Virus record (IMG/VR): IMGVR_UViG_3300027573_000779
Coordinates: 62,001-126,000 of that record
DNA: 64,000 nt
Reading direction: 5' to 3' (one strand)
The notes beneath the pieces were generated by a model. That model did not search any database. It was not told the origin of the DNA and saw only the letters and a program-made list of their open reading frames with translations. The translations under genes and the position numbers were made by a program. Shown piece by piece: positions 10,382 to 64,000 of this stretch (position 1 is its first letter; each line of letters begins with the position of its first letter).

Positions 10382-10951
10382 ATGTTACAATTCTTTAAGC
10401 CCACTTCTCGCAATTCAGGGTCAGCCTGTTCTTTTTCAAACGATACCGAAAGAGAAGGATTTTATCTCTCAATGGTAAAACAAGCCTCATGGGATGCCGA
10501 AACCAAAAGAGGGAAGTTCTTTTCAAACAAGAAGAATCCCGAAGCCTCGGTTTCAGCTAAACTAAGCCTTACTGAGGTTGGTGGATTTTTAAATGTTTTA
10601 GAGAAAAACAAAAAGCTTCATTCTGTTCATAGCACTGATAAGCAAACCGTTATTATCGATTTCAGTCCTTACTTGAAGGAAAACGTGCAGATAGGTTTTA
10701 GTCTCTCTGTCAACAAAACAGCAGGCGAACAAAAAACATCCTTTCTTATTGGGTTCAACTTGGATGAAGGAAGAGTTATTAGGGAATACTGCGTAGCTTT
10801 TCTCCAACGTCAGTTTGCCGTTTTGGACGCTGTTGACACTGCTTATAGGGCTAAAGGTCAGGAGTGGAAGAAGAACAACCCTCCCGCTCAAACAGAACCA
10901 GTAGCACCCGTAGTTCCTCAGGAAGATGAATCTAATTTAGACAACGTGTAA
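10382..10951 (+). CDS. Hypothetical protein, possibly ssDNA-binding
   Basis: Beta-rich body with a Pro-rich, acidic C-terminal tail (PQEDESNLDNV), next to the polymerase. Function is inferred. Confidence 0.4.
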   Translation: MLQFFKPTSRNSGSACSFSNDTEREGFYLSMVKQASWDAETKRGKFFSNKKNPEASVSAKLSLTEVGGFLNVLEKNKKLHSVHSTDKQTVIIDFSPYLKENVQIGFSLSVNKTAGEQKTSFLIGFNLDEGRVIREYCVAFLQRQFAVLDAVDTAYRAKGQEWKKNNPPAQTEPVAPVVPQEDESNLDNV

Positions 10952-36190: not shown

Positions 36191-37078
36191 ATGATAAGTG
36201 CTGACAATCCTTATTTAAGCCAAAAAGAGTATTTCGAAAAATTATACGTAGAAGAAAAGAAAAGTTCTTGGGAAATTGCAAAACTTTTAGATATTTCACA
36301 AAACTCTGTAATGTGTATTTTAAAAGCTCATAATATCCCAAGACGCTCTTATAAAGAAAACAAAATGCCAGTCCCTAAAGGCTCTAATCTTTCAGAAGCT
36401 CACAAACAAGCTCTTTCTAAATCACATATCGGAAAAATTGTTTTAAATCCCGAAACAGGTCGCGGCTACAATTTCAGTCAAATTGAAGTTGAATGTGGCT
36501 TTTGTAAGACAAAAATCTTTAAAAAGAAATGCCACACCGAACAACACAAAGTTTTCTTTTGCAATCACAAATGTCACGCTGGTTATAAAAAGGGCAAACC
36601 AAGTCTACACTATGCACGTAAAAGCGTTGCTTGCACTGAATGCGGCGAAACTTTAATAAGAAAACGATGCGAAATTAACAAAAATAAGAACGGGCGCTTC
36701 TTTTGTGACCAAATTTGTGCTGGTATCTGGAAATGCAAAAACCTCACAGGAGACAAGGTTTATAATTACAGAGGCGGCTACGAGAAATGGGAAAATTATG
36801 GCCCATCTTGGCCTTGGGCGCGGAAACAAGCCCTAGAAAGAGATAATCATACTTGTCAAAACTGCGGCAAAACTAAACAAGACTTAGGTAAGGAACCAGA
36901 CGTTCATCACAAAATCCCCTTCAGATTCTTTGGTCTAGAACGCCACGAAAAGGCTAACAGGCTATCTAATTTAGTCTGCTACTGTCCCAAATGCCACAAA
37001 GATATTGAAGAACGCGACCTTCCAATGATTGAAAATTACGCAAAAATCGTTAGAGGAATTCACCTTCCAAAAGTATAA
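36191..37078 (+). CDS. HNH homing endonuclease with HTH, NUMOD3-like and Zn-finger domains
   Basis: EIAKLLDIS HTH; LSEAHKQALS; two CxxC...FCxxxC units; CQNCG...DVHHKIP...NRLSNLVCYCPKCH. Confidence 0.88.
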   Translation: MISADNPYLSQKEYFEKLYVEEKKSSWEIAKLLDISQNSVMCILKAHNIPRRSYKENKMPVPKGSNLSEAHKQALSKSHIGKIVLNPETGRGYNFSQIEVECGFCKTKIFKKKCHTEQHKVFFCNHKCHAGYKKGKPSLHYARKSVACTECGETLIRKRCEINKNKNGRFFCDQICAGIWKCKNLTGDKVYNYRGGYEKWENYGPSWPWARKQALERDNHTCQNCGKTKQDLGKEPDVHHKIPFRFFGLERHEKANRLSNLVCYCPKCHKDIEERDLPMIENYAKIVRGIHLPKV

Positions 37079-43446: not shown

Positions 43447-46400
43447 ATGTCAACCAGATTATATTTAAATTGGAACGAATCGGGGTATAATGCATCCCTA
43501 AGTAAATATTACTCTGGATGGCAATCCGGCTCAAGTAGATTTTCAGTATATGGTTTGGTGCAAAAAGAAGGTATTACAGACAGATATGCTCCCAATCATT
43601 TAGACTTTCCTATAACTACCGGATTTATTCCGTTTGCTATGTCGAAAGCTCTCTCCGAACCCTTAGTTTCGGGAGTTTATAATACTGGATTGTTTTCTGG
43701 AATATCTACTTATTTATGTGGAAAAACCGGGACTTTTGCTATTCAGGTTGGTATTTATAATTTCGATGGGAGTCAGTTAAAAAGCGAAATTTTTCCTGTA
43801 ACAACCGGAAGAAACATAGTTATAACAGATTCTGTTCAAGGAAAATATCTTACAGATATTTTCCCAAACACAGGTTTGCATTCTGGTTTTACGGCAGATA
43901 GAGGAGATAGACTTGGAATAGTCTATGGTTTTTATAATAGAACTAATAGTACTAGTAATTTTCATTTTGAATCAGCCGCAACTACAAACATTGGAGATTT
44001 TTCATTTAGCGAAACCCCCGCAGAAGTATTCGATTTACCACAGTTAGGTACTTTTAAAAATCCTTGGATTGAATTTTCTAATAATTTTCAATTTGTTAAA
44101 ATAAAAAACATACAAGGAAAAGCGGCTATTAGCAGAGGAGCTAGGGATATAAGAGGAACTGCTAGAATTGCTACTCCTCCTTATTATTATGAAAATACCA
44201 CTCCGATAATATTGCCATATTACGGAGGAGGTTCGACCTATCCTTCAACAATTAATGTCACTGGTTTGGATTCAAGTAAAACTTCAGTGACCGTTTGGAT
44301 TAATGGATTTGCTTATACTAATCCTAGAAACGTAGAAATATTGTTGGTTTCTCCTAGTGGAAGAAATATTGTTTTGATGGGTGACAATTCACCGTCAACA
44401 ACTTCAGTTAGCGGTTTAAATTTAACTTTTAACCAAAGTTCTCCTCATATAATGGGAGCTAGTAAGAGGTTATCTGGCGTATCTTATCTCCCTACACTTA
44501 ATAATGAGTCTCGATTTTTCCCTCCTGCTTATTCTGGTATTATTGACAATACAATAGCTAATTCAAATTTGAATGTTGTTTCTGGAGACGACCCCAATGG
44601 AACTTGGTCGTTGTATGTTCTAACCCAAGACGCAAGAATTGGAGGAATTAAATCTTGGGGGCTTTCTTTTGCTAACAATGCAGCTCAAGTTGCTCATTTT
44701 TCATTAAGTGGAAGTTTTGGCCCATTAACCGTTCCAGAAACACAAAGCGGCAGAGCAAGAATTAAAGTTACTAGAACTCCAACTACAAATTGGATGTATA
44801 GTATAAAGACAGGAGGGGGCGACCCTGAAATTACTGATTTTGTTTCTGGATATTCATTCGGAGAAGCTATTTTAAAATCAACGGGAACTTATGAATATAT
44901 CTATCCATATGCTATTGTAGGAGACTTTCTCCAATCTTTTAGTGGTGTTGGTGGCAATAGAAATCATATAGAATTTTACTTTTCTGACCCAGAATGGGGG
45001 TCAGCGGTTTATTTAAGGAACGAACAACCCATTTTCCCCACTAACGATGGTCTGTTTTGGAGCAATGGTAATCAAGCCTACGAAATAACAGCGGGAGCAT
45101 TACACAATTCTGGTATTTGGGAATTACAACGACTTCTTTTTCCGGCGCAAATTGGTTTAGCTAAAATTATCAAATTAAACGTTAATAACCAAACCGCAGT
45201 TGCTAGGATTTTTAATACGGTTAGATGGTCTATTAACGGTGTAGCGCGAATTGCTGGCGCGGGAGCACAATCTTACGACCAATTAGGCAAAGCTAGAATA
45301 AGCACTACCACACAAAGAACTCAAACTGGTTTAGCGCGAATTTTAACCACCAGCCAAAGAACACAAACCGGCATTGCTCGAATTCTTAATACCAGCCGTT
45401 GGTCTCAAACCTGCATTTCTAGAATTAAGGTTACTACAACTCAAACTCAAAGTTGTAGGGCTAGAATTCAGGTTACAACTCGCAATAGTCAAACAGGTCT
45501 TGCTAGAATTAAGGCTACAAGTTCTCGCGTTCAAACAGGGTTGGCACGAATTTTAAACACTACACGAAATACCCAAACCGGTTTATCTAGGATTAAAACT
45601 ACAAGTAATTGGAGCCAAACTTGTAAAGGTAGAATTAAAGTTTCTACTTCCAATATTCAAACTGGCGTTGCTAGAATCAGAGTTTCAACAAATAGAACTC
45701 AAACCGCTTTAGCTAGGATTTTAAATACAAGCAGAACAAGTCAAACTGGTCGCGCAAGAATTCGGACAACAACACAGAATAGCCAAACTGGGGTTGCGAG
45801 GATTAAAGCCGCAACCAGTCGCTCTCAAACCGGTTTAGCAAGAATTTTAAATACTTCTAGATTTACTCAAACTGGCGTTGCTAGGATTAAAAATACAATT
45901 TCATGGACCCATACTGGCGTTGCTTACATTGCTGCTCTTGGAAGTCAGATTAGAGTTCAACTTGGTAAAGCTCGCATACTTAATACTGTTAGATATAGTC
46001 AAACTGGCAAGGCTAATATTAAACATATTAGGAGCTACACGCAAACTGGTATTGCTAGAATTCGCTGCACAATAAATAGAACTAATTCTGGTTTGGCGCG
46101 AATCAAAGCTTCAATATCTCAAAGTCAACTTTGCGTTGCTAGAATTAAGACTACAAGTTCTTTTAGCTGCCAAGGCAAGGCAAGAATTCAAAGAGCTTCT
46201 CAATGGACCGTTAACGGCCTAGCTAGGGTTAAAGTAACCGACAATAATTCTCAAACTGGCGTTGCAAGAATCAAGGCTACAACTCAGAATTCTACTCAAG
46301 GTAAAGGAAGAGTTCTCCGCACAATTCAGCAATCTCAAACTGGTAAGGGTTATATTACTGTATCGGCGGCTTCGAACCGGACCCAAACAGGTATTGCTAG

Positions 46401-46911
46401 AATTCTAAGAAGTTCAACTCAAAATCAGCTTTGTGTTGCTAGGATTAAAACTACTCAAAATAACAATGTTAATTGTGTAGCCCGAATTAAAACTACAAGT
46501 AGTAGAATAATTACTTGTATTTCAAGAATCTCTAAGTCTAGCACCCAAAATCAAACCGGTGTTGCTAGAATCAGAACTAGCACCAGAAATAGTATTTCTT
46601 GCTTAGCTAGAATCAAAACCACTACTTTAAACTCAACAACAGGTAAAGGTAGGATTCAAACTACTTCTAGACATAGCAATACTGGATTAGCAAAAATTAG
46701 AGTTTTAAAGACCCAAACTCTTACGGGTATAGCTAGAATTTTCGGAACTCAAAGAAGAACGACAACCGGTTTAGCTTTTATATTCCCTTATAGTATTACA
46801 GAATTACCTAAAAAGGAAATTATTGCTACTATTTTGGGTCAAAAAGTGACGGGTCCTCAAGGTGTCAGAATTGGACTAATTATCAAGGAGGTTATTGTTA
46901 GGGTTCCATAG
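43447..46911 (+). CDS. Fibre-like protein with proprotein-convertase P-domain and QTGxARI repeats
   Basis: YPSTINVTG...ILLVSPSG...NGTWSLYV...IKSWGLSF (P-domain); roughly 40 repeats. Confidence 0.7.
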   Translation: MSTRLYLNWNESGYNASLSKYYSGWQSGSSRFSVYGLVQKEGITDRYAPNHLDFPITTGFIPFAMSKALSEPLVSGVYNTGLFSGISTYLCGKTGTFAIQVGIYNFDGSQLKSEIFPVTTGRNIVITDSVQGKYLTDIFPNTGLHSGFTADRGDRLGIVYGFYNRTNSTSNFHFESAATTNIGDFSFSETPAEVFDLPQLGTFKNPWIEFSNNFQFVKIKNIQGKAAISRGARDIRGTARIATPPYYYENTTPIILPYYGGGSTYPSTINVTGLDSSKTSVTVWINGFAYTNPRNVEILLVSPSGRNIVLMGDNSPSTTSVSGLNLTFNQSSPHIMGASKRLSGVSYLPTLNNESRFFPPAYSGIIDNTIANSNLNVVSGDDPNGTWSLYVLTQDARIGGIKSWGLSFANNAAQVAHFSLSGSFGPLTVPETQSGRARIKVTRTPTTNWMYSIKTGGGDPEITDFVSGYSFGEAILKSTGTYEYIYPYAIVGDFLQSFSGVGGNRNHIEFYFSDPEWGSAVYLRNEQPIFPTNDGLFWSNGNQAYEITAGALHNSGIWELQRLLFPAQIGLAKIIKLNVNNQTAVARIFNTVRWSINGVARIAGAGAQSYDQLGKARISTTTQRTQTGLARILTTSQRTQTGIARILNTSRWSQTCISRIKVTTTQTQSCRARIQVTTRNSQTGLARIKATSSRVQTGLARILNTTRNTQTGLSRIKTTSNWSQTCKGRIKVSTSNIQTGVARIRVSTNRTQTALARILNTSRTSQTGRARIRTTTQNSQTGVARIKAATSRSQTGLARILNTSRFTQTGVARIKNTISWTHTGVAYIAALGSQIRVQLGKARILNTVRYSQTGKANIKHIRSYTQTGIARIRCTINRTNSGLARIKASISQSQLCVARIKTTSSFSCQGKARIQRASQWTVNGLARVKVTDNNSQTGVARIKATTQNSTQGKGRVLRTIQQSQTGKGYITVSAASNRTQTGIARILRSSTQNQLCVARIKTTQNNNVNCVARIKTTSSRIITCISRISKSSTQNQTGVARIRTSTRNSISCLARIKTTTLNSTTGKGRIQTTSRHSNTGLAKIRVLKTQTLTGIARIFGTQRRTTTGLAFIFPYSITELPKKEIIATILGQKVTGPQGVRIGLIIKEVIVRVP
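45148..46783 (+). repeat. Coding tandem repeat, 42-nt / 14-aa period
   Basis: For example QTGLARILTTSQRT QTGIARILNTSRWS QTCISRIKVTTTQT. Confidence 0.9.
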
Positions 46912-53242: not shown

Positions 53243-56200
53243 ATGGCCAATGATGGAGTAAGAGTACCTGTAGTACTAGAGTGGAATCAAGCGATTCAAG
53301 ACTCTATAGCACAGGCACGAAGAATCCCGCCAGTTAACGTTAGAGTTAATACTGGCCGGATTGGAGATGGTTTTAAACACGCGTCTAAAGAGGCCGAACA
53401 GTTTGAACGAGCCTTAGCTAGCGCCCAAACCCGCGTTTTAACCCTCGGGGCGTCTTTCGGCGCTCTGTTCGCAATTCAAAGAGGCTTTAAAGCCTTAATC
53501 CAAACAACCATTGATGTTGAAAAGCAGCTTAAAGACATTAATGTTATTTTGGGAGTAAGCACAAGCAGTCTTAGCACCTTTTCTGAGCAACTGTTTGGTA
53601 TAGCTAAAAATACCGGCCAAAGCTTTGAAACAGTAGCTAAAGCCGCCTTGGAATTTAGCCGCCAAGGTCTTGGAGTTCAAGAAACTTTAAAAAGAACCAA
53701 TGACGCCCTTATTTTAACCCGCCAAACTGGATTAGATGCCGCTGAAGCAACCGACGCTATCACTGCCGCTATTAACAGCTTTAGTCAAGCTGCTCTGACT
53801 TCAAGCGATATTGTTAATAAGTTTGCTAAGGTTGACCAAAACTTTGCAGTTAGTTCCGCTGACTTAGCAGAAGCTATTAAACGGGTGGGTTCTAGCGCTG
53901 AAGAAGCGGGAGTAGGAATTGATGAACTTATTGCTTTAGTTACCTCTGCCCAACAAATAACTCAACGTGGCGGTGCTGTAATTGGTAACGCTTTTAAGAC
54001 TATTTTTACTCGTACAGCCAGACCCCAAGTGCTTAATGACCTTGAACAACTTGGAATTACTGTCAGAAACGCTCAAGGAGATATTCTCCCGGCTGTTCAA
54101 ATCCTCACAAATTTGGCGAACAGTTATGATAATTTAAGTCAGGCCCAACAATCTGCCGCCGCTGAACTTGTAGGGTCTGTTTATCAAATTAACATTTTAA
54201 AAGCTTCTTTAAAAGATTTGGGTAAAGAACACTCGTTTTACTCTAAGGCTCTCAATGACTCTTCAACCGCAACTGACGAAGCTGTTCAACGTAACGAAGC
54301 TTTAAATACAACTCTAGCGGCTTTAATTAATAGAACTAAAGAAAACGTAAGGCAGTTTTCGGCTAATGTGGGACAGGACACTTTTGGCCCTTCAATTCGA
54401 AGAGTTGCTGGTCTTGCTAATGGTTTCTTGGAAAATGCTAATAACATTTTAGGTGCCGATAAAGCTGAAGTGGCTTTTAAAGAAATTGGTTCAGTTCTTG
54501 GAAAAGGACTGGTTAGGGGTTTTGGACAGTTCTTACAAGGTCCGGGTTTGGCGCTGATTGGTGTTGCACTGTTTAAATTTGCCAGTCAGTTCGCAAGGCT
54601 GGCAACAGAAGCTTATAAACTTTTGACTGACCTTAACAAAAGCACTGACCAAAGGGCCGCTATTGAGTCTCGCGTTTTAGGCGTTTTAAGACAAGAGCCT
54701 AATATTTATAGCCAAATACTAGGAAATAGTTTAAGTGTTGTTCAGGCACAAGAAAAGGTTCTTCAAATTATAACGGCACAAAATGCAGCCTTAAACGCCC
54801 AAAAAGCAATAGCTTCACAACTAACATCCACCCTCATTAATACTGGCGCAGTAGGAGTCAATCCTAAGACTAGGGAAGTGGTGACCAATCCAGCTTTAAA
54901 AAAAACACGCTCAGAAGGTAGCATTCCGAACTTTGCGGTAAATATTTTGGACGCTCAAAAGGAAATTGAAGGCGCTTATAAAGCTAAATACATTCCCGGC
55001 CAAGTGCGCCAAGTGGGAGACGCAGTAATTAATAATGCAGAAAGTATTAAAACTAGCGCCGCACACCCCCAAGAAAAAGCTATAGTGCCGCCTCAAGGCA
55101 GCGAAGCGGGACAAAAATACAAAGAAGCTTATCGAACTATTTATGGTAAAAGCCCTTATGGGGATGCAATTACCAAGGGGAGAAACGCTTTTCAGGTTCA
55201 GTGGATGAAGTCAATCGGCGCTAAAAGAGGGTTGGATTTAACTAATCCAGATAATATTTTAGTGCTTGCAAAACAGTTCAGAGAAACCTATGGGTCACAA
55301 CAGGGGCTGTTGCCATTTAATAAAGGAAAGGTGCCAAGTTTTGCCTCTAGTTTAACTTTATCAACTTCAAAAAACTTTGTTAAACTCGCAAAAGAAAGGG
55401 GTGTCAAAATTGTCAGAGAAGACCAGAGGGTTCCCCAAGGTAGTGCTTTTTATATTCGTTCTGGCGCAGAAGGAAAGAAAATAGTTCTTCCAAAAAAGAC
55501 TCCTATTGATGTTCTTGCTCATGAAGTAGGACACGACCTTTCATATGATTACTTAAATATATACTCTCCAAGACTTTTAAAAGAACAATCAGCTAACATC
55601 GAAGCCTTAAAAAGAATTCCCACAGAAAAAGAAAGACAGGGATATCGTGAAACACTAAGTCCTGCAACTAAAACATATAAAATTGGAATATTAAGAGGTA
55701 TTTTGAAGGATTTTGCTCCTAATATAGACGACGAAAGTATTTTTATTAATGAACTCAGAAAGCAGGAAGGCAAACATTCTGATAGATATTCCCCCGTAAT
55801 AAGAGCGCACAGTACCGCTTTGCGTGCTTTGATAAAAGATATAGGACCAAAAAAAGTAAAAGAGATATTGTCACAATTGCCCGAAATAGACAAAACCGAT
55901 TTAAAAAGAAAACCTTACGCTTCGGGGCACGTTCCAAACTTCAACCTCTTCAGTAAGGTTTCTACTGAAGACGAAGCTAACCGAATGGTTAAAGTCTCTT
56001 CGGTTAACGCGCTGAAGCCTTATTTGAAGAAATCAGAAGGTGATGTGCCAAATTTTGCCTCAGGGCGCGTCCCGAACTTTGCTTCTAGTTTATCTCTTTC
56101 AACTAGTAAAAAACTATTAAGGGAAGCTAAAAAAACAGGAATAAAAACACTAAGAACCAACGAACCAATACCTTATTATGATATTCCTTCGAGTTCGGTT

Positions 56201-59200
56201 CGCGCTCCAAAAGGAACTTCTTTTGATGTTATTGCGCACGAACTTGGTCACGGATTTTCTTATCAGGAAAACCCCCTTCTGGAAAGAGTGCGTTCAGATA
56301 TAAAATCAGAAGTGGGCGCTAATACTGAAATTTTAAACAGATTATCAGGAAAAGAAAAGAAATCATTTGCTAAACAAATGCTTAATCCTTTTAAAACCTA
56401 CAAGATAACATCTTTAGTTGATTCTTTAAGAGGACTGGTTCCCCTACCTGAGATGGTCAAAATCATTGGACAACACAGAATAAGAACCAAAGATTTAGGA
56501 AAAAGAGCCGGGGATTTAGGTAATTATAGTGATTTTAGAAAATCTCAATCACAAGTTCTAAGAGACATTGTTAAGACAGTGGGACCACAAAAAGTTAAAG
56601 AGCGCATTTCGAATCTTTCACCGGTTAATAAACAAGACTTAAAGGCGCGTTATTTTGCTTCAGGGCGAGTGCCCAACCTTGCCAAAAGTTCCTACTCTTT
56701 GGTTCATAGTACAACTCCACAGTTGGCTAAGACAATAGAGTCAGAGGGCCTTAAACCTAGAAGAAAAGAGGGCTTTGAAAAGGGGTATTTTTCGCAACAT
56801 GTTACTAACTTTGAGAAACTTGCTGAAGAAGTCAGAGCAAGCGAGTTTCCTGATTTGCCTAGTAGACTAAACTCGGTTTATTTAACTCCAGAAAGTCGAA
56901 AATTTAATAGGTTTGGAACGCATTTTAAAGTTGCCCCAAATAAAGAAAGCTATATTTTCAACTTAAAAAAGATAGATAAAGCTTTTGATTTAGCGGGTCC
57001 TTATGGGACGAGCACTGTTCCAAATACTAAATTACGCGAACTTGCTCGTGAATATTTCCAATCCGGCATTCCTTTAAATAGACAAAATCTAAATAAAGTT
57101 TTAGAAAAAGAGAAAGAAAATACGGGTTATGACTATGGAGACAATCCTTTTTTTGAAATCCTGACGCCGGGACCAGTTTCAGCTAAAAAAATAAAAAGGC
57201 TTAACTCAAAAGGCGCGGTTCCAAACTTTAATATTGATGTTAATGGTATTTTTTCACAACTTCCTGAGCGTGAACGCGTTGTAATAGAAGAACACGCCGA
57301 TGGATTAAAATTGGGCGAAATTGCAAAGAAATATAATATTTCAAGAAATAAAGCAAGCTCTATTTTCAATCGCGGACGTAATAGTTTTATAAAGCAATAC
57401 GGTTTGGCTAAAAAGGGTTTTGGAGAGTTCGCGGCACAAGGTAAAATCCCAAACTTTGCTAAAATCTACAAACTTCGCACTGGATTTCCTGAACATATTT
57501 TAAAACAAATTCAATCATTACATGGTAAACAATTACGAATATTTCCGACTAAGGACCACTTTCCTAAAGAGTTGCGAAACGATATTATAAAGTATGGAGA
57601 AAACAATATTCCCAAGTTTGACCCAAACTTAATAATCGACAGTAATGAAATTATTGAAGTTGAACACGATGATAATATTCGAGGACTTCATGGAACCAAT
57701 ATTGAGAAAATTGTAGTAAAGAAAACAACGCCTTATTTAGACCAACATCTGGCAATTGCCAAAGATGGCGGTATTAAGAGTATTTGGCACACTTTAAATC
57801 CAGACAGGTTTAATAAACCACAAAATCCTAGAAATAGAATTTATAGTCAGGGCCAAGTGCCGAATTTTGCTTCTTCATTTTCTAATATCAGTTTAGCAAA
57901 AGCTCCACATAATTCTACTGCGATAAGAAGACTGGGAATACCAAAAACCGGCAGTTATGCTTCCTATTACTTTGACAGGAATAAACACATAAACATAAGT
58001 TTCATTGAATCTAACCAAAAAGGGGACGCTTTTAGGTTATTTAAAGCTTTGGGGCGCACCGCCCGTAGAATTAAGCGTCCAATTATAAGTGAAACTCTAG
58101 TCAAATCGTCCAAACAACCTGACGAAAACCAAACTAATTGGGAACAACTTTTAGTAAGATATCCTCAATTACGCTACCGGGACTTACCAAACGCTTCAAC
58201 CAATGGGGTTTTTCGGCCAAATCTTCTAGGAAGTGAAGAACGAAGCTTTAACACCTTTGAAGAACTAAAAACTATAGTAAACCAAGTTCCTTCAGATATT
58301 TTCAAAAAAAACCTTAGAACAGGATTCACAAGTGTCGGCAACCTCTCCACTACTTTTAAAAACAAAGGGCAAGCGCCAAATTTTGCTTACATTCCATTCA
58401 TTTCTCCTCTTGTCGGGCGCGTGGTGACTAATTTGGTGCATTCTGGCGAAGGTTTTAGTATGGCGGCTTTAAAACCTGCTTTTAATTTTGCTAAGGAAAA
58501 GGGCATAAAACAAACGATTAAAAATATTATTTTAGACAAACCGGCGCACCAAGGAACTTTTTTTGGTTTTAACGAAGAAGGAAGAGAAGACTTCGGCTTG
58601 TCCGAATTTGGTTTTCGAAAAATGTTTGGTTTGGAACCTAGAATTCCACCAAATCCAGAAGTTAAACTCCGTCAAATTCCGGGCAAGAAAAACACCTATG
58701 CAATAGGTGGAAGAAATCCACTACAAAATTTTGGAGTTAATCTAACAACAAAAACTCCTCAAAATGTTAGATATCGCCCTCAAGACCCAAATACAATTAG
58801 AAGTTTGTTTAGGAGTCCAGATTTCGGAGCTTTTAACCTAGATGCCAACACCAAAAACAGAAAAATTCGCTATTCTGACACTTGGGATTTTGCACTCCAT
58901 GGGAGCGAAAAGTTGAATTTTAAGGAATTAAAAGACGAACTAAAAAGACGTTTTATTAGACAGCCCGAACTTGAATCTATCAAAGATGAATTTAAATTAA
59001 ACGTTCTTCCAAAAGTTTTAAAACAAAACCCTTTAAAAACAATTAAGGATATTAAAGAACTTTTTCCCAAAAACAGACTTAAGAGTGTTTTGAATCCTGC
59101 GAATCTTGTTTTCCAAGGTAATGCGGGAGCCAGTCTTTTTACTAATGAGCCGGTTCATTCTTATGGTAGTTCACAGTTAACAAAACTGTTTAGGAAGCTA

Positions 59201-62200
59201 GTAAACAGTGTCTCGTCACCAGCAACATTCGTAGGCCAAGTTACAAATCCCGATGACAAAAAACTTCTTTTTGATAGTCTTACTGACCTTGCAAATAGCG
59301 ATATAGACCTTCAAAAAACCAAAGCTACGCCTGCCGCCAAATTTTTAGGTACAAAATATAAACAAAACAAATTAAAAGAATCATTTATAACACTTCAGGA
59401 TAGATTGTATAATAGATTCAATTTTAATCCTTCTTCAAAACGTGATTTTAGTAATCGCAAGGACGCTTTTCCAATTGGCAAGCCGGGAATCAACATTTTT
59501 TCGGCTATAGAAAAATATGGTAGAGCCAAAGGTGAAGTGCCAAATTTTGCTTCCTCTTTGCCTTTATCAACCGCCAAAGAATTATTAGCTCTAGCCAAAG
59601 AAAGAAAGATTCGCATTACTAGAGATAAAGAACTTGGAGCTTTTCATAGATTTTCAGAAAGAAGAATTAATCTTCCTAAAGGCGAATCAATTGAAACTTT
59701 CGCGCATGAATTGGGTCACAGTTTATCTACCGATAATTTTTATAAATTTGCTAATGCAAATCGGATAGAAAGAGAAGTAATGGCTAATCAAGAGATTGTC
59801 CAACGACTGGTTGACCCAAAAGAACAAGAAACATTTAAAACAAACACTCTTGAATCTTTTAAATCTTATAAAAGCGGAATAATACTAGAACGGGTTTGGC
59901 CACAATTGCAAATTCCAGAAGAAAAACGCAATCAATATATTGAAATTCAACAAAAAGAATTTAAAAAAACTCAGAGAAGTAAAGGTATAAGTCCAGAGCA
60001 TCGAAGTAGCGCTGCTGTATTACGAAAACTTGTTAAAGATTTTGGGCCAAAAACCATAAAACAACTTATTAGTTCCACTCCCCGCGACGAGAGGGAAGCT
60101 TTAAAACTGCGCTATTCTTTTGGAAAAATCCCTAGTTTTGCCGTAATGAGTCCGCAGGAAAAAGCCTTTAAAGATATCGCTTTAAGACTAAATTCAGAAA
60201 AACATATAGGATATGGCCCACAAAAATATTTTTTACCATTTTTGTCTGATAAAACCGTAAATCCCTATCAATCATTATATTATAGCACCCCATACGAACA
60301 ACAACAAACAAAAAAAGAAGAAGTTGAAAAGAAACTAATAAATTTTATTCCCGAAGGTAAAAATTTCCTAAGACCATATAACAATATTCTACAGCAAGCC
60401 CCCGCTGTTAAAGATGCTTACAGGTTTGTAAGAAACCTTTTTGGTGATTTTGCTGGTCGTGGTTCTGGCGACCCTCTTGAGCGTTCTGCAAACAACTATT
60501 TGAAGATAATGCGTGGTTTACAAAAAACCGGTGTTTTTAAAGAAATAAACAAACTGTCGCCGCAACAATTATTAAGAGGAGGGATAAAATCAGGTAATCT
60601 TTCTCTATACGGTTTTGGGGGAGACCCCCTTCCTGAATCAAAATTCAAAACAAGAGCTTTGGAGTCTGGCAATCGCGACCTTGTGGCTAACGACCCATTA
60701 TATTCGTTTCATCAAAGGTTTGAAAGTAAAAAAGAAGAATTAAAACTAAGAAAACAGTTTAAAGCTTTTACAAGCTCCTTTGTAAACTCTGTTTCTAAAT
60801 TCAGGAACATTCCAAGAATAAAAAATAAACTTGAAGAAATAACTGGCGGTGACCATACAAGACTAGCCCTAACTGCAAAAAAATATATTCCGCCTGAAAT
60901 TTATGAACGTTTAGCTTACCTAAGCAAAACCTTTGTAAATACAAAACGGCAGGCTTATAATCTTGGTGTAGACATTGATTCTCCATTTTACTTTCGTGGA
61001 CAAAGTAGAAGCGAAGCGGCAATTTTAGACAAACTTAAAGAATTTACCTCTTTGGGATTTGCAAGTCAGACAGATAGATTAGGCGTTACTTTAAATAATA
61101 ATCCATTGTTTGCTGCTGCTTTTGGCGTTACTTCCGGCAAAGAGTTTGGAAAACCGGGGTTATTGGGAATTTATAGAAAAAAACAAATCGACAGTAGAGA
61201 ACCAAGAAGGCTAGGAGAAAACATCTCTTCTGGCAGGCTTAGAATAGATGACCTGTTTGGTTTTATTGATTTGGCGGCTCAAAAATTTGTTCCAGCGTCT
61301 TCTCTAAGTAAAGTATATGGTCCAGAACACGCGCCCTCTTCTGAAATTCTGGAGAAAACCAAATCTTTGCTAAGTAAAGAAGATTACGACATAATAAAAT
61401 CTCAAAGTTTACATAAAGATTATAATCCAAACACACAATTAACTCTTACAAGAGGATTAGATGTTCGTAGAGGAAAGAAAATATCAGACTACCGTGGTCC
61501 AAGTCAAACTAACCCCAATCTTGGCGAACTTTCTTTTAAAGAGTTGCTTGACTATCTAAAACACTCAATAGATACTACCCAACCGGGAGTTATTCCAACA
61601 GGTGGGCCAGAAAGTTCTTTTGCAAATGTCAGTTCTGACGCTATTTTAGTTAAAAACCGAAAAACCGCTAAAGAATTAGAAAATAAACCCGTTCAAAAAG
61701 AGGGACAGGCGCATTTCCAAAGGCTGGTCAGTCAATCAGAATTATTCGGATACGACAGACTACAAAACCTTTTTGATAACCCAAATCTTTCAACAGAAAG
61801 AAAAAACAAACTGTTGAGAAGCGGAATCGTTGTTAATCTTCCTGAAATTAGAGGGCAAATTGGATATAGAACGGCAGCACCCGAACGCGAATACCCAATT
61901 TTAACATCAACCCCAAAAACTTCTGGACCTGTAAATATTGGCAGATTATTTGCTGTTTCGCCTTATATATTCAAAAAATCAGGTTATTCAAAAGGAAAGT
62001 TGCCAAACTTTGCAAAAGCTCCGCAATTTTCTCAACTTCAATTAAAAGAAATTTTGGGCGGCTCAACTGAAGCTAGAAAAGCTGTTTTCCAAGACAGTCA
62101 ATTTGTTTTAAAATACGGAAAATCTTCTGGTCACGCTATAAATGAATTTGTTTCAAATAGATTATTTAATGCTTTTGGCGAAAACGTGCCCGAAGCTCAA

Positions 62201-64000
62201 TTAATTGACACTCCTCAAGGTAAAGCCTTTCTGTCTAAATTCATCCAAAGTCAATCTTTTGGAGAACTGTATGATAAAGGAGATATTAATACAAGACAAA
62301 GATTAATTCAAGGAGTTAAACCTTCTTTTGCGGCTCATGCGGCCTTTGCTAATTGGGACGCATTTGGCGATTGGAATCCAGCAGGAGCCAATGTAAGACT
62401 AGATTCAAATAATAGACAGTTTTTTGTGGACTTGGGTGGGGCTTTAGCTTATAGAGGTTTGGGCGCACCTAAACCCAATTTTGGTCCAGAAGTGCCCGAA
62501 CTGCGTTCTCTTATTGATTATGCATCTAATCCTTATGCTAAAGCCGCTTTTAAATTTCAACCAGAAGAGCTAAAATCTAATGTTGCCGATTTTCTAAAAA
62601 GAACTCCGTCAAATTTAAGCGGTTTGTTAGAGTCTTTAAATAGTGAAACCCAAGGGGACCCACATATCACTAAAGCACTAAAACAAATTCCTAATCGTTT
62701 AAATTATCTTAGAAACTTTATTAAATCCAAAGGTTCTATCCCAAATTTCGCGTTCTTTTCAGGAATAGCTTCTGTCGCGCAATCACTTACAGGAGCTAAA
62801 AAACTTCCAAAACAAAACATTCGTGCTAACATTACTCCCGAAGAAATGGAGGCAATCTATTTTAATTACGCTAAAACCATTTATAATCCTCAAAAAGGAA
62901 AAATCCCAGTAGGTTTAAATTATTTTGCGAACAAGGCTTTCAATTCCGCGATGTTTGAACATCAAGGCTCTTATGTTTTTGGTTCTCACGATAACGAGTT
63001 GTTCCTTCCAACTCACTTTGCTCCAAAAAGCTTAAAGGGCGGATTTGCGGCGCAAAAAGCATTAAGTGAATATTCTAATGTAATGTATGCCGTAACTCAG
63101 GAAATGACCCCAATGCTAGAAAGACTTGGGTTCAGTGTGGCTAAATCTGGAGTTAAAGTTCCCTTCAGGGGCGGAACTGCATTAAAAGACTTTTTGGTTT
63201 CTGATAAACTGCGAACCCCAATGTTTCTTACCAATTTCCTTTCTCAAATGAAACAGGGAGCGGGTTCTAAATACGTTAAACAATATTTAACAAGAGAAGA
63301 CCAAGCTAAATTTAGTCATTATTATCCTTATGGTGGGGGAACTCCGGGCGAAGATGAAGCTATTGAATACTTAAGAAACAGAGGAATTACAGCTAATCAG
63401 GGCAAAATTCCTTCGTCTAATGCGTATTTAAAAGCTAAGTTAACGCACGTCCCCAATTTTGCTCTTCTTGACTCTCTTAGGAGTTTAATTGATGTTCAAA
63501 ACAATAAGTTTTTGGGTTCGAAATTACCCAATACACTTGGAGAAATTTACCCTGTTATAAGGGACCAATTTCCTAAAATAGGACCAATCTTAAAGGGAAT
63601 TAACCCTAGATTACTACTAGATGATATTAATGTTGATAGTGGGACATTATATCGAGGTTTTGCTAGAGCTGTGCGCTCAAAAACATATGACGGTCCTTTT
63701 AGAGCATATGACAGTCCTATTAAACCCTCCGAAACCGTCACAGGTGAACTTGACTTTTTATATAACTTTACGCACGCTTTAAATAGAGGCCAACCGTTAA
63801 AATTCCAAAAAGCCTCGCTAGAAGCCCTGTTCCAAATTGGCGCTCAAGCAAAACAAGAAGGGATAACTGATAAAGTAGGTATCAATACAAATAGCGACCC
63901 ATTTTTTAGAAACCTCGGAAACCCGCAACAACATAGAGATTTTGCACGAAACTTTTTAAATTTAGATAAATCAAAACCCAATCAATCCTTTATTCAAAAA
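53243..64000 (+). CDS. Giant tape measure protein fused to an array of enzyme-like modules (3' truncated; absent from ORF track)
   Basis: Hand translation from ATG 53243 shows no stop in 3586 codons. First ~560 aa are TP901-type tape measure (AALEFSRQG, NFAVSSADLAEAIKRVGS, GAVIGNAFKTIFTR); the rest is modules separated by GxVPNFA linkers. Confidence 0.93.
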   Translation, partial: MANDGVRVPVVLEWNQAIQDSIAQARRIPPVNVRVNTGRIGDGFKHASKEAEQFERALASAQTRVLTLGASFGALFAIQRGFKALIQTTIDVEKQLKDINVILGVSTSSLSTFSEQLFGIAKNTGQSFETVAKAALEFSRQGLGVQETLKRTNDALILTRQTGLDAAEATDAITAAINSFSQAALTSSDIVNKFAKVDQNFAVSSADLAEAIKRVGSSAEEAGVGIDELIALVTSAQQITQRGGAVIGNAFKTIFTRTARPQVLNDLEQLGITVRNAQGDILPAVQILTNLANSYDNLSQAQQSAAAELVGSVYQINILKASLKDLGKEHSFYSKALNDSSTATDEAVQRNEALNTTLAALINRTKENVRQFSANVGQDTFGPSIRRVAGLANGFLENANNILGADKAEVAFKEIGSVLGKGLVRGFGQFLQGPGLALIGVALFKFASQFARLATEAYKLLTDLNKSTDQRAAIESRVLGVLRQEPNIYSQILGNSLSVVQAQEKVLQIITAQNAALNAQKAIASQLTSTLINTGAVGVNPKTREVVTNPALKKTRSEGSIPNFAVNILDAQKEIEGAYKAKYIPGQVRQVGDAVINNAESIKTSAAHPQEKAIVPPQGSEAGQKYKEAYRTIYGKSPYGDAITKGRNAFQVQWMKSIGAKRGLDLTNPDNILVLAKQFRETYGSQQGLLPFNKGKVPSFASSLTLSTSKNFVKLAKERGVKIVREDQRVPQGSAFYIRSGAEGKKIVLPKKTPIDVLAHEVGHDLSYDYLNIYSPRLLKEQSANIEALKRIPTEKERQGYRETLSPATKTYKIGILRGILKDFAPNIDDESIFINELRKQEGKHSDRYSPVIRAHSTALRALIKDIGPKKVKEILSQLPEIDKTDLKRKPYASGHVPNFNLFSKVSTEDEANRMVKVSSVNALKPYLKKSEGDVPNFASGRVPNFASSLSLSTSKKLLREAKKTGIKTLRTNEPIPYYDIPSSSVRAPKGTSFDVIAHELGHGFSYQENPLLERVRSDIKSEVGANTEILNRLSGKEKKSFAKQMLNPFKTYKITSLVDSLRGLVPLPEMVKIIGQHRIRTKDLGKRAGDLGNYSDFRKSQSQVLRDIVKTVGPQKVKERISNLSPVNKQDLKARYFASGRVPNLAKSSYSLVHSTTPQLAKTIESEGLKPRRKEGFEKGYFSQHVTNFEKLAEEVRASEFPDLPSRLNSVYLTPESRKFNRFGTHFKVAPNKESYIFNLKKIDKAFDLAGPYGTSTVPNTKLRELAREYFQSGIPLNRQNLNKVLEKEKENTGYDYGDNPFFEILTPGPVSAKKIKRLNSKGAVPNFNIDVNGIFSQLPERERVVIEEHADGLKLGEIAKKYNISRNKASSIFNRGRNSFIKQYGLAKKGFGEFAAQGKIPNFAKIYKLRTGFPEHILKQIQSLHGKQLRIFPTKDHFPKELRNDIIKYGENNIPKFDPNLIIDSNEIIEVEHDDNIRGLHGTNIEKIVVKKTTPYLDQHLAIAKDGGIKSIWHTLNPDRFNKPQNPRNRIYSQGQVPNFASSFSNISLAKAPHNSTAIRRLGIPKTGSYASYYFDRNKHINISFIESNQKGDAFRLFKALGRTARRIKRPIISETLVKSSKQPDENQTNWEQLLVRYPQLRYRDLPNASTNGVFRPNLLGSEERSFNTFEELKTIVNQVPSDIFKKNLRTGFTSVGNLSTTFKNKGQAPNFAYIPFISPLVGRVVTNLVHSGEGFSMAALKPAFNFAKEKGIKQTIKNIILDKPAHQGTFFGFNEEGREDFGLSEFGFRKMFGLEPRIPPNPEVKLRQIPGKKNTYAIGGRNPLQNFGVNLTTKTPQNVRYRPQDPNTIRSLFRSPDFGAFNLDANTKNRKIRYSDTWDFALHGSEKLNFKELKDELKRRFIRQPELESIKDEFKLNVLPKVLKQNPLKTIKDIKELFPKNRLKSVLNPANLVFQGNAGASLFTNEPVHSYGSSQLTKLFRKLVNSVSSPATFVGQVTNPDDKKLLFDSLTDLANSDIDLQKTKATPAAKFLGTKYKQNKLKESFITLQDRLYNRFNFNPSSKRDFSNRKDAFPIGKPGINIFSAIEKYGRAKGEVPNFASSLPLSTAKELLALAKERKIRITRDKELGAFHRFSERRINLPKGESIETFAHELGHSLSTDNFYKFANANRIEREVMANQEIVQRLVDPKEQETFKTNTLESFKSYKSGIILERVWPQLQIPEEKRNQYIEIQQKEFKKTQRSKGISPEHRSSAAVLRKLVKDFGPKTIKQLISSTPRDEREALKLRYSFGKIPSFAVMSPQEKAFKDIALRLNSEKHIGYGPQKYFLPFLSDKTVNPYQSLYYSTPYEQQQTKKEEVEKKLINFIPEGKNFLRPYNNILQQAPAVKDAYRFVRNLFGDFAGRGSGDPLERSANNYLKIMRGLQKTGVFKEINKLSPQQLLRGGIKSGNLSLYGFGGDPLPESKFKTRALESGNRDLVANDPLYSFHQRFESKKEELKLRKQFKAFTSSFVNSVSKFRNIPRIKNKLEEITGGDHTRLALTAKKYIPPEIYERLAYLSKTFVNTKRQAYNLGVDIDSPFYFRGQSRSEAAILDKLKEFTSLGFASQTDRLGVTLNNNPLFAAAFGVTSGKEFGKPGLLGIYRKKQIDSREPRRLGENISSGRLRIDDLFGFIDLAAQKFVPASSLSKVYGPEHAPSSEILEKTKSLLSKEDYDIIKSQSLHKDYNPNTQLTLTRGLDVRRGKKISDYRGPSQTNPNLGELSFKELLDYLKHSIDTTQPGVIPTGGPESSFANVSSDAILVKNRKTAKELENKPVQKEGQAHFQRLVSQSELFGYDRLQNLFDNPNLSTERKNKLLRSGIVVNLPEIRGQIGYRTAAPEREYPILTSTPKTSGPVNIGRLFAVSPYIFKKSGYSKGKLPNFAKAPQFSQLQLKEILGGSTEARKAVFQDSQFVLKYGKSSGHAINEFVSNRLFNAFGENVPEAQLIDTPQGKAFLSKFIQSQSFGELYDKGDINTRQRLIQGVKPSFAAHAAFANWDAFGDWNPAGANVRLDSNNRQFFVDLGGALAYRGLGAPKPNFGPEVPELRSLIDYASNPYAKAAFKFQPEELKSNVADFLKRTPSNLSGLLESLNSETQGDPHITKALKQIPNRLNYLRNFIKSKGSIPNFAFFSGIASVAQSLTGAKKLPKQNIRANITPEEMEAIYFNYAKTIYNPQKGKIPVGLNYFANKAFNSAMFEHQGSYVFGSHDNELFLPTHFAPKSLKGGFAAQKALSEYSNVMYAVTQEMTPMLERLGFSVAKSGVKVPFRGGTALKDFLVSDKLRTPMFLTNFLSQMKQGAGSKYVKQYLTREDQAKFSHYYPYGGGTPGEDEAIEYLRNRGITANQGKIPSSNAYLKAKLTHVPNFALLDSLRSLIDVQNNKFLGSKLPNTLGEIYPVIRDQFPKIGPILKGINPRLLLDDINVDSGTLYRGFARAVRSKTYDGPFRAYDSPIKPSETVTGELDFLYNFTHALNRGQPLKFQKASLEALFQIGAQAKQEGITDKVGINTNSDPFFRNLGNPQQHRDFARNFLNLDKSKPNQSFIQK
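54917..63463 (+). repeat. Dispersed in-frame linker repeat G-x-[VILA]-P-[NS]-[FL]-[AN]
   Basis: Copies start at 54917, 55325, 55925, 56039, 56063, 56663, 57212, 57440, 57851, 58367, 59531, 60122, 61994, 62732 and 63443 (THVPNFA), with a degenerate copy at 63401. Confidence 0.92.

What the first reader, a model, noticed from the sequence alone, without database searches (positions are those of the whole stretch)
57233..57439. Isolated sigma-70 region 4 HTH carried as a virion module
Seen: a 69-aa module, FSQLPERERVVIEEHADGLKLGEIAKKYNISRNKASSIFNRGR, bounded exactly by two linkers. Established: this matches the sigma region 4 pattern that binds -35 elements and the RNA polymerase flap. Inference: an injected transcription modulator or sigma mimic; very unusual inside a tape measure protein.
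Basis: partly seen in the sequence, partly recalled or inferred. Interest (0 to 1): 0.75.

Follow-up and report, generated by a model that had tools for sequence, protein, structure and literature searches.

The report
Sigma-4-like HTH module inside tape measure
A giant tail tape measure protein of an uncultured 209-kb phage carries, among about sixteen linker-separated passenger modules, a small DNA-binding domain resembling the promoter-reading end of a bacterial sigma factor; it may be shot into the host with the DNA, but its delivery and its target are untested.

Summary
Window 57233-57439 (+) encodes 69 aa, residues 1331-1399 of a 5,468-aa tape measure protein (TMP). The segment lies exactly between two copies of a G-x-[VI]-P-N-F-[AN] linker. 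This protein has 17 such linkers and the rest of the 209-kb genome has none.

The module is a four-helix HTH of the sigma region 4 / LuxR class. Pfam Sigma70_r4 scores 24.0 bits against a cut-off of 24.1, and TIGR02937 gives E 5e-7 over its region-4 end only. The AF2 model's matches in the PDB are mostly sigma domain 4. A 35%-identical module between the same linkers in a second phage TMP passes the Sigma70_r4_2 cut-off. It is not a sigma factor, because region 2 is absent.

The TMP belongs to a large uncultured family: 519 IMG/VR loci, of which 80 were read. Conserved ends and the conserved linker frame a shuffled set of more than 100 mostly unknown module families. The HTH module is in 2 of about 90 TMPs read.

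The closest precedents are the P23-45 TMP-fused virion RNA polymerase and zincin-bearing polyvalent proteins.

Delivery into the host, release at the linkers and action on transcription are plausible but inferred. The verdict is a new variant of a known kind.

The parts
53243..64000 (+). In-window part (aa 1-3586) of the 5,468-aa tape measure protein gene. The ORF ends at genome 131649, 5,649 nt beyond the window end.
   Evidence: no stop over 16.4 kb. PF10145 97.6 bits. PHROG TMP families on the N-terminal core and phrog_934 on the C-terminal part. tblastn to annotated TMPs.
53603..54163 (+). TP901-type TMP core (PhageMin_Tail), aa 121-307
   Evidence: E 1.2e-27. It is 38-46% identical to the N-terminal cores of related giant TMPs P0040-P0048.
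54530..54607 (+). Hydrophobic, membrane-segment-like stretch, aa 430-455, upstream of the cargo region
   Evidence: Kyte-Doolittle scan. Further such stretches lie at aa 4056-4080, 4112-4134 and 5244-5263, beyond the window.
54917..63463 (+). Cargo region as far as the window shows it: 15 of the 17 G-x-[VI]-P-[NS]-F-[AN] linkers (aa 559 to 3407) and the modules between them. The region continues to aa 3805 outside the window.
   Evidence: The same linker recurs in related TMPs. A logo from 511 linkers gives G100, P100, N96, F/Y96. Linker codons vary synonymously.
57212..57232 (+). Upstream linker GAVPNFN (aa 1324-1330)
   Evidence: Low AF2 confidence (about 47) in the model.
57233..57439 (+). 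The 69-aa module (aa 1331-1399): a sigma region 4 / LuxR-class four-helix HTH with a short basic tail
   Evidence: Homologous module in L042.
57254..57379 (+). Core matched by Sigma70_r4 and r4_2 (module residues 8-49). AF2 helices are ERERVVIEEHA, LGEIAKK and RNKASSIFNRGRNSFIKQY; the last two form the HTH.
   Evidence: profile positions 3-45 of 50. (helices at model residues 19-29, 34-40, 45-63; pLDDT 79-88).
57440..57460 (+). Downstream linker GKIPNFA (aa 1400-1406)
   Evidence: Low AF2 confidence.
56684..57211 (+). Module upstream of the HTH (aa 1148-1323), function unknown. Its C-terminal end is also found upstream of the HTH module in L042.
   Evidence: DUF2441 E 9e-4, below cut-off. phrog_5663 E 3e-8, unknown function. 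BLASTP of L042 aa 47-196 against P0001 aa 1286-1408.
55346..55924 (+). Zincin-like module 1 (aa 702-894), HEVGH
   Evidence: Paralogous to the other two. H-E-x-x-H plus a downstream Glu are invariant in the alignment. phrog_87 metallo-protease E 0.004.
56084..56662 (+). Zincin-like module 2 (aa 948-1140), HELGH
   Evidence: Weak Pfam reprolysin/M13/M4 hits centred on the motif. Weak language-model leads to LPD1/5/23 domains of polyvalent proteins.
59552..60121 (+). Zincin-like module 3 (aa 2104-2293), HELGH
   Evidence: phrog_87 metallo-protease E 2.4e-5.

Best explanation
The segment is a genuine, independently folding HTH domain of the sigma region 4 / LuxR class. It is one of about sixteen passenger modules strung on a conserved G-[FLY/x]-[IV]-P-N-[FY]-A linker in the middle of the tape measure protein of a sheath-less, siphovirus-type 209-kb phage. 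As part of the TMP it would be loaded, extended or loosely folded, in the tail tube lumen. It would then be expelled into the host envelope and cytoplasm ahead of the DNA, where a small all-helical domain can refold. There it most likely acts in the first moments of infection by binding DNA or the host RNA polymerase. Two routes are plausible: occupying the beta-flap site of sigma region 4, or sitting on -35-like sequences. Either would bias host-polymerase transcription before any phage gene is expressed. SHOWN: the domain class, the exact linker boundaries, TMP identity, the modular family architecture, a second occurrence of the module, and the phage's apparent dependence on host RNA polymerase. 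INFERRED: presence in the virion, delivery to the cytoplasm, release at the linkers, and the molecular target.
For: Domain class: Sigma70_r4 and r4_2 E about 3e-5. TIGR02937 E 4.7e-7, covering only its region-4 end, positions 111-160 of 165. PHROG sigma-factor families 351 and 1740. The AF2 core has pLDDT 79-88 and four helices. Foldseek's PDB list is dominated by sigma domain 4 (SigF, SigR, SigW, SigE, SigL/SigD), with LuxR-type regulators and YlxM also present. The ESM neighbours are stand-alone 60-75-aa PF08281 proteins at score 0.96 with 181 shared features. The alignment to SigW domain 4 is colinear, including the 'RGR' end of the recognition helix.
Selection: a 35%-identical module sits between the same linkers in an unrelated-size TMP (L042) and passes the Sigma70_r4_2 cut-off, 27.4 vs 25.7 bits. 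The module's GC and GC3 equal the rest of the gene, so it is not a fresh insertion.
Carrier: TMP identity and membrane-like segments on both sides of the cargo region.
Cargo logic: more than 100 module families are shuffled between conserved ends in about 90 TMPs. They include a GNAT and a staphylococcal-nuclease-like module and three zincin-like modules here. This matches the polyvalent-protein theme (PMC5512222).
Precedent: P23-45 gp96, a 5,002-aa TMP whose N-terminal part is a virion RNA polymerase that transcribes pre-early genes (PMC10770324).
Host-polymerase dependence: a phage sigma-like gene is present, and no T7-like or beta-prime family hit was found.
Against: No experiment or tool here shows that the module is in virions, reaches the cytoplasm, is cut free, or binds DNA or polymerase. 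The module's own Pfam score is just under the cut-off. Pairwise matches to solved structures are not significant, and CENP-B/Psq-type HTHs score as well as SigW, so 'sigma-like' could be no more than 'simple HTH'. The module is rare in the family (2 of about 90 TMPs) and has no other relative among 1.84 billion representatives, so it is dispensable for the family. Only about 6 of 90 TMPs contain any HExxH, so the embedded zincins cannot be the general enzyme for the linkers, and cleavage at the linkers is unproven. In the best-studied phages, TMPs end up in the periplasm and inner membrane, not clearly in the cytoplasm (own knowledge). All modules of this TMP are basic, pI 9.1-10.4, so the basic recognition helix is not distinctive.
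Confidence: 0.4

Rival explanations
1. DNA-handling role rather than transcription. The HTH holds or guides the leading end of the phage genome, as a pilot or end-protection function, while the TMP forms the entry channel. It has no contact with RNA polymerase.
For: The domain class binds duplex DNA, and the recognition helix with its tail carries 9 basic and 1 acidic residues. The TMP lies next to the DNA end in the virion and leaves just before it (own knowledge; the model discussed in PMC10770324). Generic HTH families (HTH_23, HTH_28, Mor, CENP-B) score only a little below sigma-4.
Against: The module is absent from nearly all family members, which eject DNA without it. The N-terminal 'LPERER' helix and the colinear match to ECF sigma domain 4 are more specific than a generic HTH.
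Confidence: 0.2
2. Passenger without a task of its own. The module is a captured HTH-coding fragment that now serves mainly as helical filler, adding about 10 nm to a tail whose length is set by the TMP.
For: Embedded motifs in other TMPs add to tail length (own knowledge: mycobacteriophage TM4). The cargo region is extremely variable, with many single-occurrence modules. The module is rare and has no close relatives.
Against: Two copies only 35% identical keep the HTH hydrophobic pattern and both pass or touch Pfam cut-offs, which argues for purifying selection on the fold. Filler would not need exact linker boundaries or an intact recognition helix.
Confidence: 0.2
3. Works in the producing cell, not in the next host. 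While the TMP precursor accumulates late in infection, its HTH binds DNA or polymerase, for example to tune late transcription together with the phage's own sigma-like protein. It is then trimmed away at the linkers before tail assembly.
For: TMPs of lambda and T5 are proteolytically processed during assembly (own knowledge). Three zincin-like modules sit in the same protein. The phage encodes a sigma-like protein with a divergent C-terminal HTH.
Against: There is no similarity between the module and the phage sigma. Making a regulator as 1% of a 600-kDa structural precursor is uneconomical. Most family members have linkers but no zincin.
Confidence: 0.08

Closest known systems
Thermus phage P23-45 gp96: tape measure protein fused to a virion RNA polymerase (PMC10770324)
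   Same: Both are giant TMPs (5,002 vs 5,468 aa) of sheath-less long-tailed phages. Both carry a transcription-related part plus metallopeptidase and membrane segments. In both the part is thought to enter with, or just ahead of, the DNA.
   Different: P23-45 carries a complete two-barrel RNA polymerase at the N-terminus. Here there is no DxDxD motif and no polymerase, only a 69-aa sigma-4-like HTH in the middle of the protein. No sequence relatedness was found: nothing in the phage collection matched the cargo region. The linker-delimited cassette architecture is not described for gp96.
Polyvalent proteins of phages and conjugative elements (Iyer et al. 2017, PMC5512222)
   Same: Both are very large proteins stringing together unrelated domains. 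Both have one to five zincin-like metallopeptidase domains interspersed among the others. They are proposed to be delivered at invasion and cut into working units.
   Different: That survey does not mention tape measure proteins (0 occurrences). Its hallmark LPD, ArdC, methylase and ART domains are not detected here by Pfam; only weak language-model leads to LPD1/5/23 were seen. The conserved G-F-I-P-N-F-A linker is not part of that description.
Sigma-70 family region 4 (Pfam PF04545 / PF08281), especially ECF sigma domain 4
   Same: The helix order, the 'LPxRxR' first helix and the HTH with an R-G-R-type recognition-helix end are shared. The fold matches SigW, SigE, SigR, SigF and SigL domain 4.
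   Different: There is no region 2 or 3, so it cannot act as a sigma factor. The score is 0.1 bit under the PF04545 cut-off. It is embedded in a structural virion protein.
Stand-alone 'sigma factor-like HTH' small proteins (60-75 aa, PF08281-only clusters in the ESM Atlas)
   Same: They have the same size and the same single-domain make-up, and they are the nearest neighbours by language-model features.
   Different: Those are separate genes of bacteria and phages with mostly unknown roles. This one is a module of a 5,468-aa protein. No sequence-level relative was found.
Phage factors that target sigma region 4 or the beta-flap: T4 AsiA/MotA (PMC6755090), Xp10 P7 (PMC3985653), P23-45 gp39 (PMC4124052), phiEco32 gp79 (PMC12276001), T4 gp33 (PMC7824862)
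   Same: They have the same presumed target, the sigma-4 / flap interface of host RNA polymerase, and the same purpose of redirecting transcription.
   Different: All of them are made after infection from early genes and none is known as a virion component. None is a sigma-4 homologue except in the loose sense that gp33 is a flap-binding HTH.
TMP-related modular effectors of contractile injection systems (Sle1; PMC13277306)
   Same: Both are tape-measure-derived carriers with exchangeable functional domains, loaded in a tail tube and expelled.
   Different: Those are bacterial CIS cargo with one C-terminal functional domain. This is a phage TMP with many internal modules and a repeated linker.

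Membership tests
Tape measure protein (TP901-type, PF10145) | PhageMin_Tail core above the Pfam cut-off | tested here: met
   97.6 bits vs 33.2. 20 PHROG TMP families, best E 1e-47.
Tape measure protein (TP901-type, PF10145) | Membrane-like segments and a long C-terminal TMP region | tested here: met
   Hydrophobic stretches at aa 430-455, 4056-4134 and 5244-5263. phrog_934 TMP on the C-terminal part.
Tape measure protein (TP901-type, PF10145) | Located in the tail lumen and sets tail length | not testable with these tools
   The phage is uncultured; no particles are available.
Sigma-70 family sigma factor | Region 2 (core binding, -10 recognition) | tested here: not met
   Only positions 111-160 of 165 of TIGR02937 match. 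No Sigma70_r2 in the module or in the adjacent modules. The single r2 hit in the genome is a separate 233-aa gene.
Sigma-70 family sigma factor | Region 4 HTH | tested here: inconclusive
   PF04545 24.0 vs 24.1 bits and PF08281 23.9 vs 25.7. The homologous L042 module passes PF08281, 27.4 vs 25.7. The fold agrees.
Sigma-70 family sigma factor | Binds the beta-flap tip and -35 DNA | not testable with these tools
   Needs pull-down, EMSA or complex modelling.
LuxR/GerE HTH (PF00196) | Score above the Pfam cut-off | tested here: not met
   19.0 vs 23.5 bits. LuxR-type regulators (VpsT, RcsB, EvgA) do appear among the fold matches.
Polyvalent proteins (Iyer 2017) | Many unrelated domains in one giant phage protein | tested here: met
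   17 linkers delimit about 16 modules. Only the three zincin-like modules are paralogous; the others have no internal match.
Polyvalent proteins (Iyer 2017) | Zincin-like metallopeptidase domains, often several, interspersed | tested here: inconclusive
   Three paralogous modules have invariant HExxH plus Glu and phrog_87 hits. No significant Pfam or PDB sequence match.
Polyvalent proteins (Iyer 2017) | Signature LPD / ArdC-N / ART / methylase domains | tested here: not met
   None found at Pfam E up to 1 in this TMP or at E up to 0.001 in 102 module representatives. Only weak ESM leads to LPD1/5/23.
Polyvalent proteins (Iyer 2017) | Delivered into the recipient cell at invasion | not testable with these tools
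   Inferred from TMP identity only.
TMP-fused virion RNA polymerase (P23-45 gp96 type) | Two-barrel polymerase with a DxDxD metal site in the TMP | tested here: not met
   No D.D.D in the 5,468 aa. No RNA polymerase family hit in the genome.

The most novel reading that the evidence does not exclude
The G-F-I-P-N-F-A-linked middle region of this TMP family is a general, previously undescribed phage platform for firing proteins into the host through the tail. It spans hundreds of TMPs and more than 100 module families. In this phage one passenger is a sigma-4 decoy that docks on the host RNA polymerase beta-flap at time zero. It would either displace host sigma region 4 to shut off host promoters or, while still tethered to the TMP pore, hold host polymerase at the entering genome end so that transcription starts there and helps draw the DNA in.
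Probability: 0.15. Interest if true: 0.85.

Novelty: new variant of a known kind. Interest (0 to 1): 0.62.

Why it matters
If the module is delivered and active, it would be the first virion-borne sigma-domain mimic. That would mean a phage can touch host transcription before any of its genes are expressed, without carrying a polymerase. The carrier matters more widely. A large uncultured TMP family, with 519 loci in IMG/VR, uses one conserved seven-residue linker to frame an exchangeable set of mostly unknown modules. That is a ready catalogue of candidate early-acting phage effectors, and a natural design for loading foreign proteins into a phage tail. The function of the linker itself (cleavage site, chaperone or tube docking site, or both) is an open question that can be tested directly.

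Tried and rejected
1. Close relatives of the module. phmmer against 1.84 billion representatives found only the protein itself. The next hits were tandem arrays of generic HTHs (HTH_7, HTH_23/28, Mor) that score by summing repeats, not true relatives.
2. A word search restricted to aa 1318-1412 among proteins of 3,000-9,500 aa found only self.
3. Scans of IMG/VR with the two-sequence HTH alignment and with the L042 module found nothing new.
4. The metagenome scan returned four unrelated HTH proteins (an AraC type, a 195-aa ECF sigma and others), none in a TMP.
5. The GenBank phage collection has no DNA or protein match to the cargo region.
6. Prophage or host search: the conserved 70-aa module has no relative in 185,579 representative prokaryote genomes (after an unusable alignment). 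The host remains unknown. There are no tRNA genes in the window.
7. The idea that the embedded zincins are the linker protease for the whole family is rejected, because only about 6 of 90 TMPs have any HExxH.
8. The idea that the linkers are DNA-level recombination repeats is rejected, because their codons differ synonymously.
9. The idea that the module derives from, or pairs with, region 4 of the phage's own sigma-like protein is unsupported: there is no similarity.
10. The idea of a hidden P23-45-like polymerase in the TMP is rejected: there is no DxDxD.
11. A k-mer search for a repeated promoter-like motif found only a coding 12-nt repeat elsewhere in the genome.
A profile search of the zincin alignment against PDB sequences gave nothing significant.
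Full report
OBSERVATION. They are residues 1331-1399 of one uninterrupted reading frame. The frame starts at window 53243, leaves the window, and ends at position 131649 of the 208,933-bp genome; the window is genome 62001-126000. The product is 5,468 aa. Immediately before the module lies GAVPNFN (aa 1324-1330) and immediately after it GKIPNFA (aa 1400-1406).

The protein has 17 such G-x-[VI]-P-[NS]-F-[AN] linkers between aa 559 and 3805. The strict form occurs 13 times, always in this frame. It occurs nowhere else in the six-frame translation of the genome, and 0.012 copies are expected in a shuffled TMP.

WHAT THE CARRIER IS. Residues 121-307 match PhageMin_Tail (PF10145) at 97.6 bits against a cut-off of 33.2. 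The first 558 residues match 20 PHROG tape-measure families, best E 1e-47, and the C-terminal 1,663 residues match another. tblastn finds annotated tape measure proteins of Bacillus and other siphophages at about 26% identity.

The genome is an IMG/VR virus record rated 100% complete. No tail sheath family is detected. A lambda gpJ-like Phage-tail_3 protein is encoded at window 23070-27035. The phage is therefore of the long, non-contractile type. Hydrophobic, membrane-like stretches lie on both sides of the linker-rich region.

WHAT THE MODULE IS. Several lines of evidence agree.
- Pfam gives Sigma70_r4 (E 2.8e-5, 24.0 bits, cut-off 24.1), Sigma70_r4_2 (23.9 vs 25.7) and, more weakly, GerE/LuxR (19.0 vs 23.5).
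- NCBIfam TIGR02937 (sigma-70/ECF superfamily) matches at E 4.7e-7, but only over its last 50 positions, which are region 4.
- The PHROG sigma-factor families 351 and 1740 match at 2e-6 and 9e-6.
- A single-sequence AlphaFold2 model of module plus linkers has mean pLDDT 69, with 79-88 in the core. It shows helices ERERVVIEEHA, LGEIAKK and RNKASSIFNRGRNSFIKQY, while both linkers score below 50.
- Foldseek against the PDB returns mainly sigma domain 4 (SigF, SigR, SigW, SigE, SigL, SigD and the primary sigma in initiation complexes), together with LuxR-type regulators and YlxM. TM-scores normalised by the model are 0.5-0.65 and probability is 1.0. E-values are weak (0.06 or worse), as expected for about 55 aligned residues.
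- The language-model search places the module next to clusters of stand-alone 60-75-aa proteins, of which 84-97% carry PF08281 (score 0.96, 181 shared features).

Pairwise sequence matches to solved structures are not significant: CENP-B E 0.2, SigW domain 4 E 0.6. The SigW alignment is nevertheless colinear over 47 residues, including the R-G-R end of the recognition helix. The assignment is therefore 'sigma region 4-like HTH', well supported as a class but borderline as formal family membership. It is not a sigma factor: region 2 is missing from the module and its neighbours.

A SECOND COPY ELSEWHERE. The TMP has relatives. A word-index search found nine giant proteins (3,187-3,745 aa; eight of the nine carry PF10145) that share the N-terminal core at 38-46% identity and only scattered modules. 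All of them carry the same linker.

A 70-aa module that closes the linker region (aa 3728-3798) is conserved at about 50-58% identity. It retrieved 519 loci from IMG/VR, of which 80 could be read. Their TMPs are mostly 1,400-5,000 aa and most carry 3-12 strict linkers, with a range of 0-12.

In one of them, L042 (IMGVR_UViG_3300044699_000039, nt 2041-2319), a module 35% identical to ours, counting the linkers, sits between GLVPSFA and GIIPNYA. On its own it passes the Pfam cut-off for Sigma70_r4_2, 27.4 vs 25.7 bits. The end of the module upstream of the HTH, and a relative of our aa 1716-2096 module downstream, are also shared. The TMP gene of L042 is broken by frame changes upstream of this region.

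No further copy was found among about 90 TMPs read, in 1.84 billion protein representatives, or in the IMG/VR and metagenome scans. The module's GC (0.36) and GC3 (0.25) match the rest of the gene. Two diverged copies that keep the HTH pattern argue for selection on the fold. The rarity shows that the module is an accessory.

THE ARCHITECTURE AROUND IT. Across 511 linkers the logo reads: small residues, then G (100%), F/L/Y, I/V, P (100%), N (96%), F/Y (96%), A (64%). Within our gene the 17 linkers use different synonymous codons. Conservation therefore acts on the peptide, not on a DNA repeat.

Between the linkers, 412 modules from about 90 TMPs fall into 102 clusters, and half of those clusters are seen only once. 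Pfam recognises almost none. In 102 representatives it finds one GNAT acetyltransferase, one staphylococcal-nuclease-like module, PGDYG, a doubtful RhoGAP, DUF2441 and our HTH.

Our TMP also holds three paralogous 190-aa modules with invariant H-E-x-x-H and a downstream Glu. They hit PHROG 87 'metallo-protease'. They have no significant Pfam or PDB sequence match and give only weak leads to LPD domains of polyvalent proteins. Only about 6 of 90 family TMPs contain any HExxH. These zincins therefore cannot be the general agent acting on the linkers. Whether the linker is a cleavage site for another protease, a docking site for the tail chaperone or tube, or both, remains open.

HOW IT MOST LIKELY WORKS. 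It is established for other phages that the TMP fills the tail tube and is expelled into the envelope ahead of the DNA (own knowledge; summarised in PMC10770324). Thermus phage P23-45 shows that a TMP can carry working transcription machinery. The N-terminal part of its 5,002-aa TMP is a virion RNA polymerase that transcribes pre-early genes (PMC10770324).

Iyer et al. describe 'polyvalent proteins' of phages and plasmids: giant chains of unrelated domains with one to five interspersed zincin peptidases. They are proposed to be delivered at invasion and cut into units (PMC5512222). That paper does not mention tape measure proteins.

Our phage has a sigma-like gene (Sigma70_r2 over the cut-off). 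No detectable RNA polymerase was found, and the TMP has no DxDxD. It therefore probably relies on host polymerase.

Putting this together, the best reading (confidence about 0.4) is that the HTH is a passenger delivered with the TMP, which acts at once on DNA or on host polymerase. The steps of delivery to the cytoplasm, release, and target are all inferred.

The rivals are these.
- A DNA-end or pilot role without polymerase contact (0.2).
- Helical filler with no task of its own (0.2).
- A role in the producing cell before trimming (0.08).

COMPARISON AND NOVELTY. The module works like, and looks like, sigma domain 4, but it fails the test for a sigma factor. The carrier is a true TMP. The whole resembles polyvalent proteins and the P23-45 TMP fusion in logic, but it differs from both. 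It has no polymerase and no LPD, ArdC or ART signature domains. It does have a conserved seven-residue linker framing exchangeable modules.

Six literature searches were run, four of them on tape measure proteins. None found a description of this linker, of this TMP family, or of a sigma-domain module in a TMP. I rate it a new variant of a known kind. The interest lies partly in the module and at least as much in the cargo-bearing TMP family it reveals.

LIMITS. The phage is uncultured and its host is unknown. The family was not found in representative prokaryote genomes. Only 80 of the 519 family loci were read.

Noticed in passing
Outside the window: genome about 142.46-143.16 kb, minus strand (L002:1051-1752:-): The phage encodes a 233-aa sigma-like protein. 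Sigma70_r2 is over the Pfam cut-off. Two CxxC pairs lie between region 2 and a divergent C-terminal HTH that Pfam's region-4 models do not recognise. It shows no similarity to the TMP module.
   Followed up: partly
L001:11182-11394 (TMP aa 3728-3798, beyond the window end) and L005-L084: A 70-aa module bounded by two linkers closes the cargo region. It has relatives at 519 IMG/VR loci and is about 50-58% identical in the TMPs aligned, with many invariant residues (RE, NPxGL, DEPxG, QGI). It has no Pfam or PHROG match and its function is unknown.
   Followed up: partly
L042:1-4164 (IMGVR_UViG_3300044699_000039): The TMP gene that holds the second HTH module is split over at least two reading frames upstream of the module. 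This is either an assembly error or a decaying gene.
   Followed up: no
Outside the window: genome 166-195 kb: A 12-nt periodic repeat, TTGGTCCC[AG]AAC, occurs dozens of times on one strand only. It is probably tetrapeptide-repeat coding sequence in several genes.
   Followed up: no
window 993-2510, 7746-10361, 10951-14096, 36191-37078: The window also encodes a DnaB-type helicase, a Pol III alpha-type polymerase, two glycosyltransferase-like proteins and an HNH endonuclease.
   Followed up: no
window 23070-27035 and 43447-46911: A lambda gpJ-like tail protein (Phage-tail_3) lies about 26 kb upstream of the TMP gene, which is an unusual gene order. A 1,154-aa protein has a proprotein-convertase P-domain-like stretch. 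Most structural genes between them have no PHROG or Pfam match.
   Followed up: no
window 53243-64000 and L001 (whole TMP): Every module of the TMP is basic, pI 9.1-10.4. The two conserved modules flanking the cargo region and the N-terminal core have higher GC (0.40-0.42) than most of the variable modules (0.32-0.38).
   Followed up: no
window 56039-56083: Two linkers stand in tandem, separated by one residue (GDVPNFA-S-GRVPNFA, aa 933-947). They are preceded by a 31-aa mini-module (aa 902-932).
   Followed up: no
L090 (ENA ERZ19026949, scaffold_67, 211 kb): The nearest giant relative, P0040 (3,401 aa), sits on a 211-kb metagenome scaffold with the same local gene order. This suggests a clade of roughly 200-kb phages with such TMPs.
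   Followed up: no
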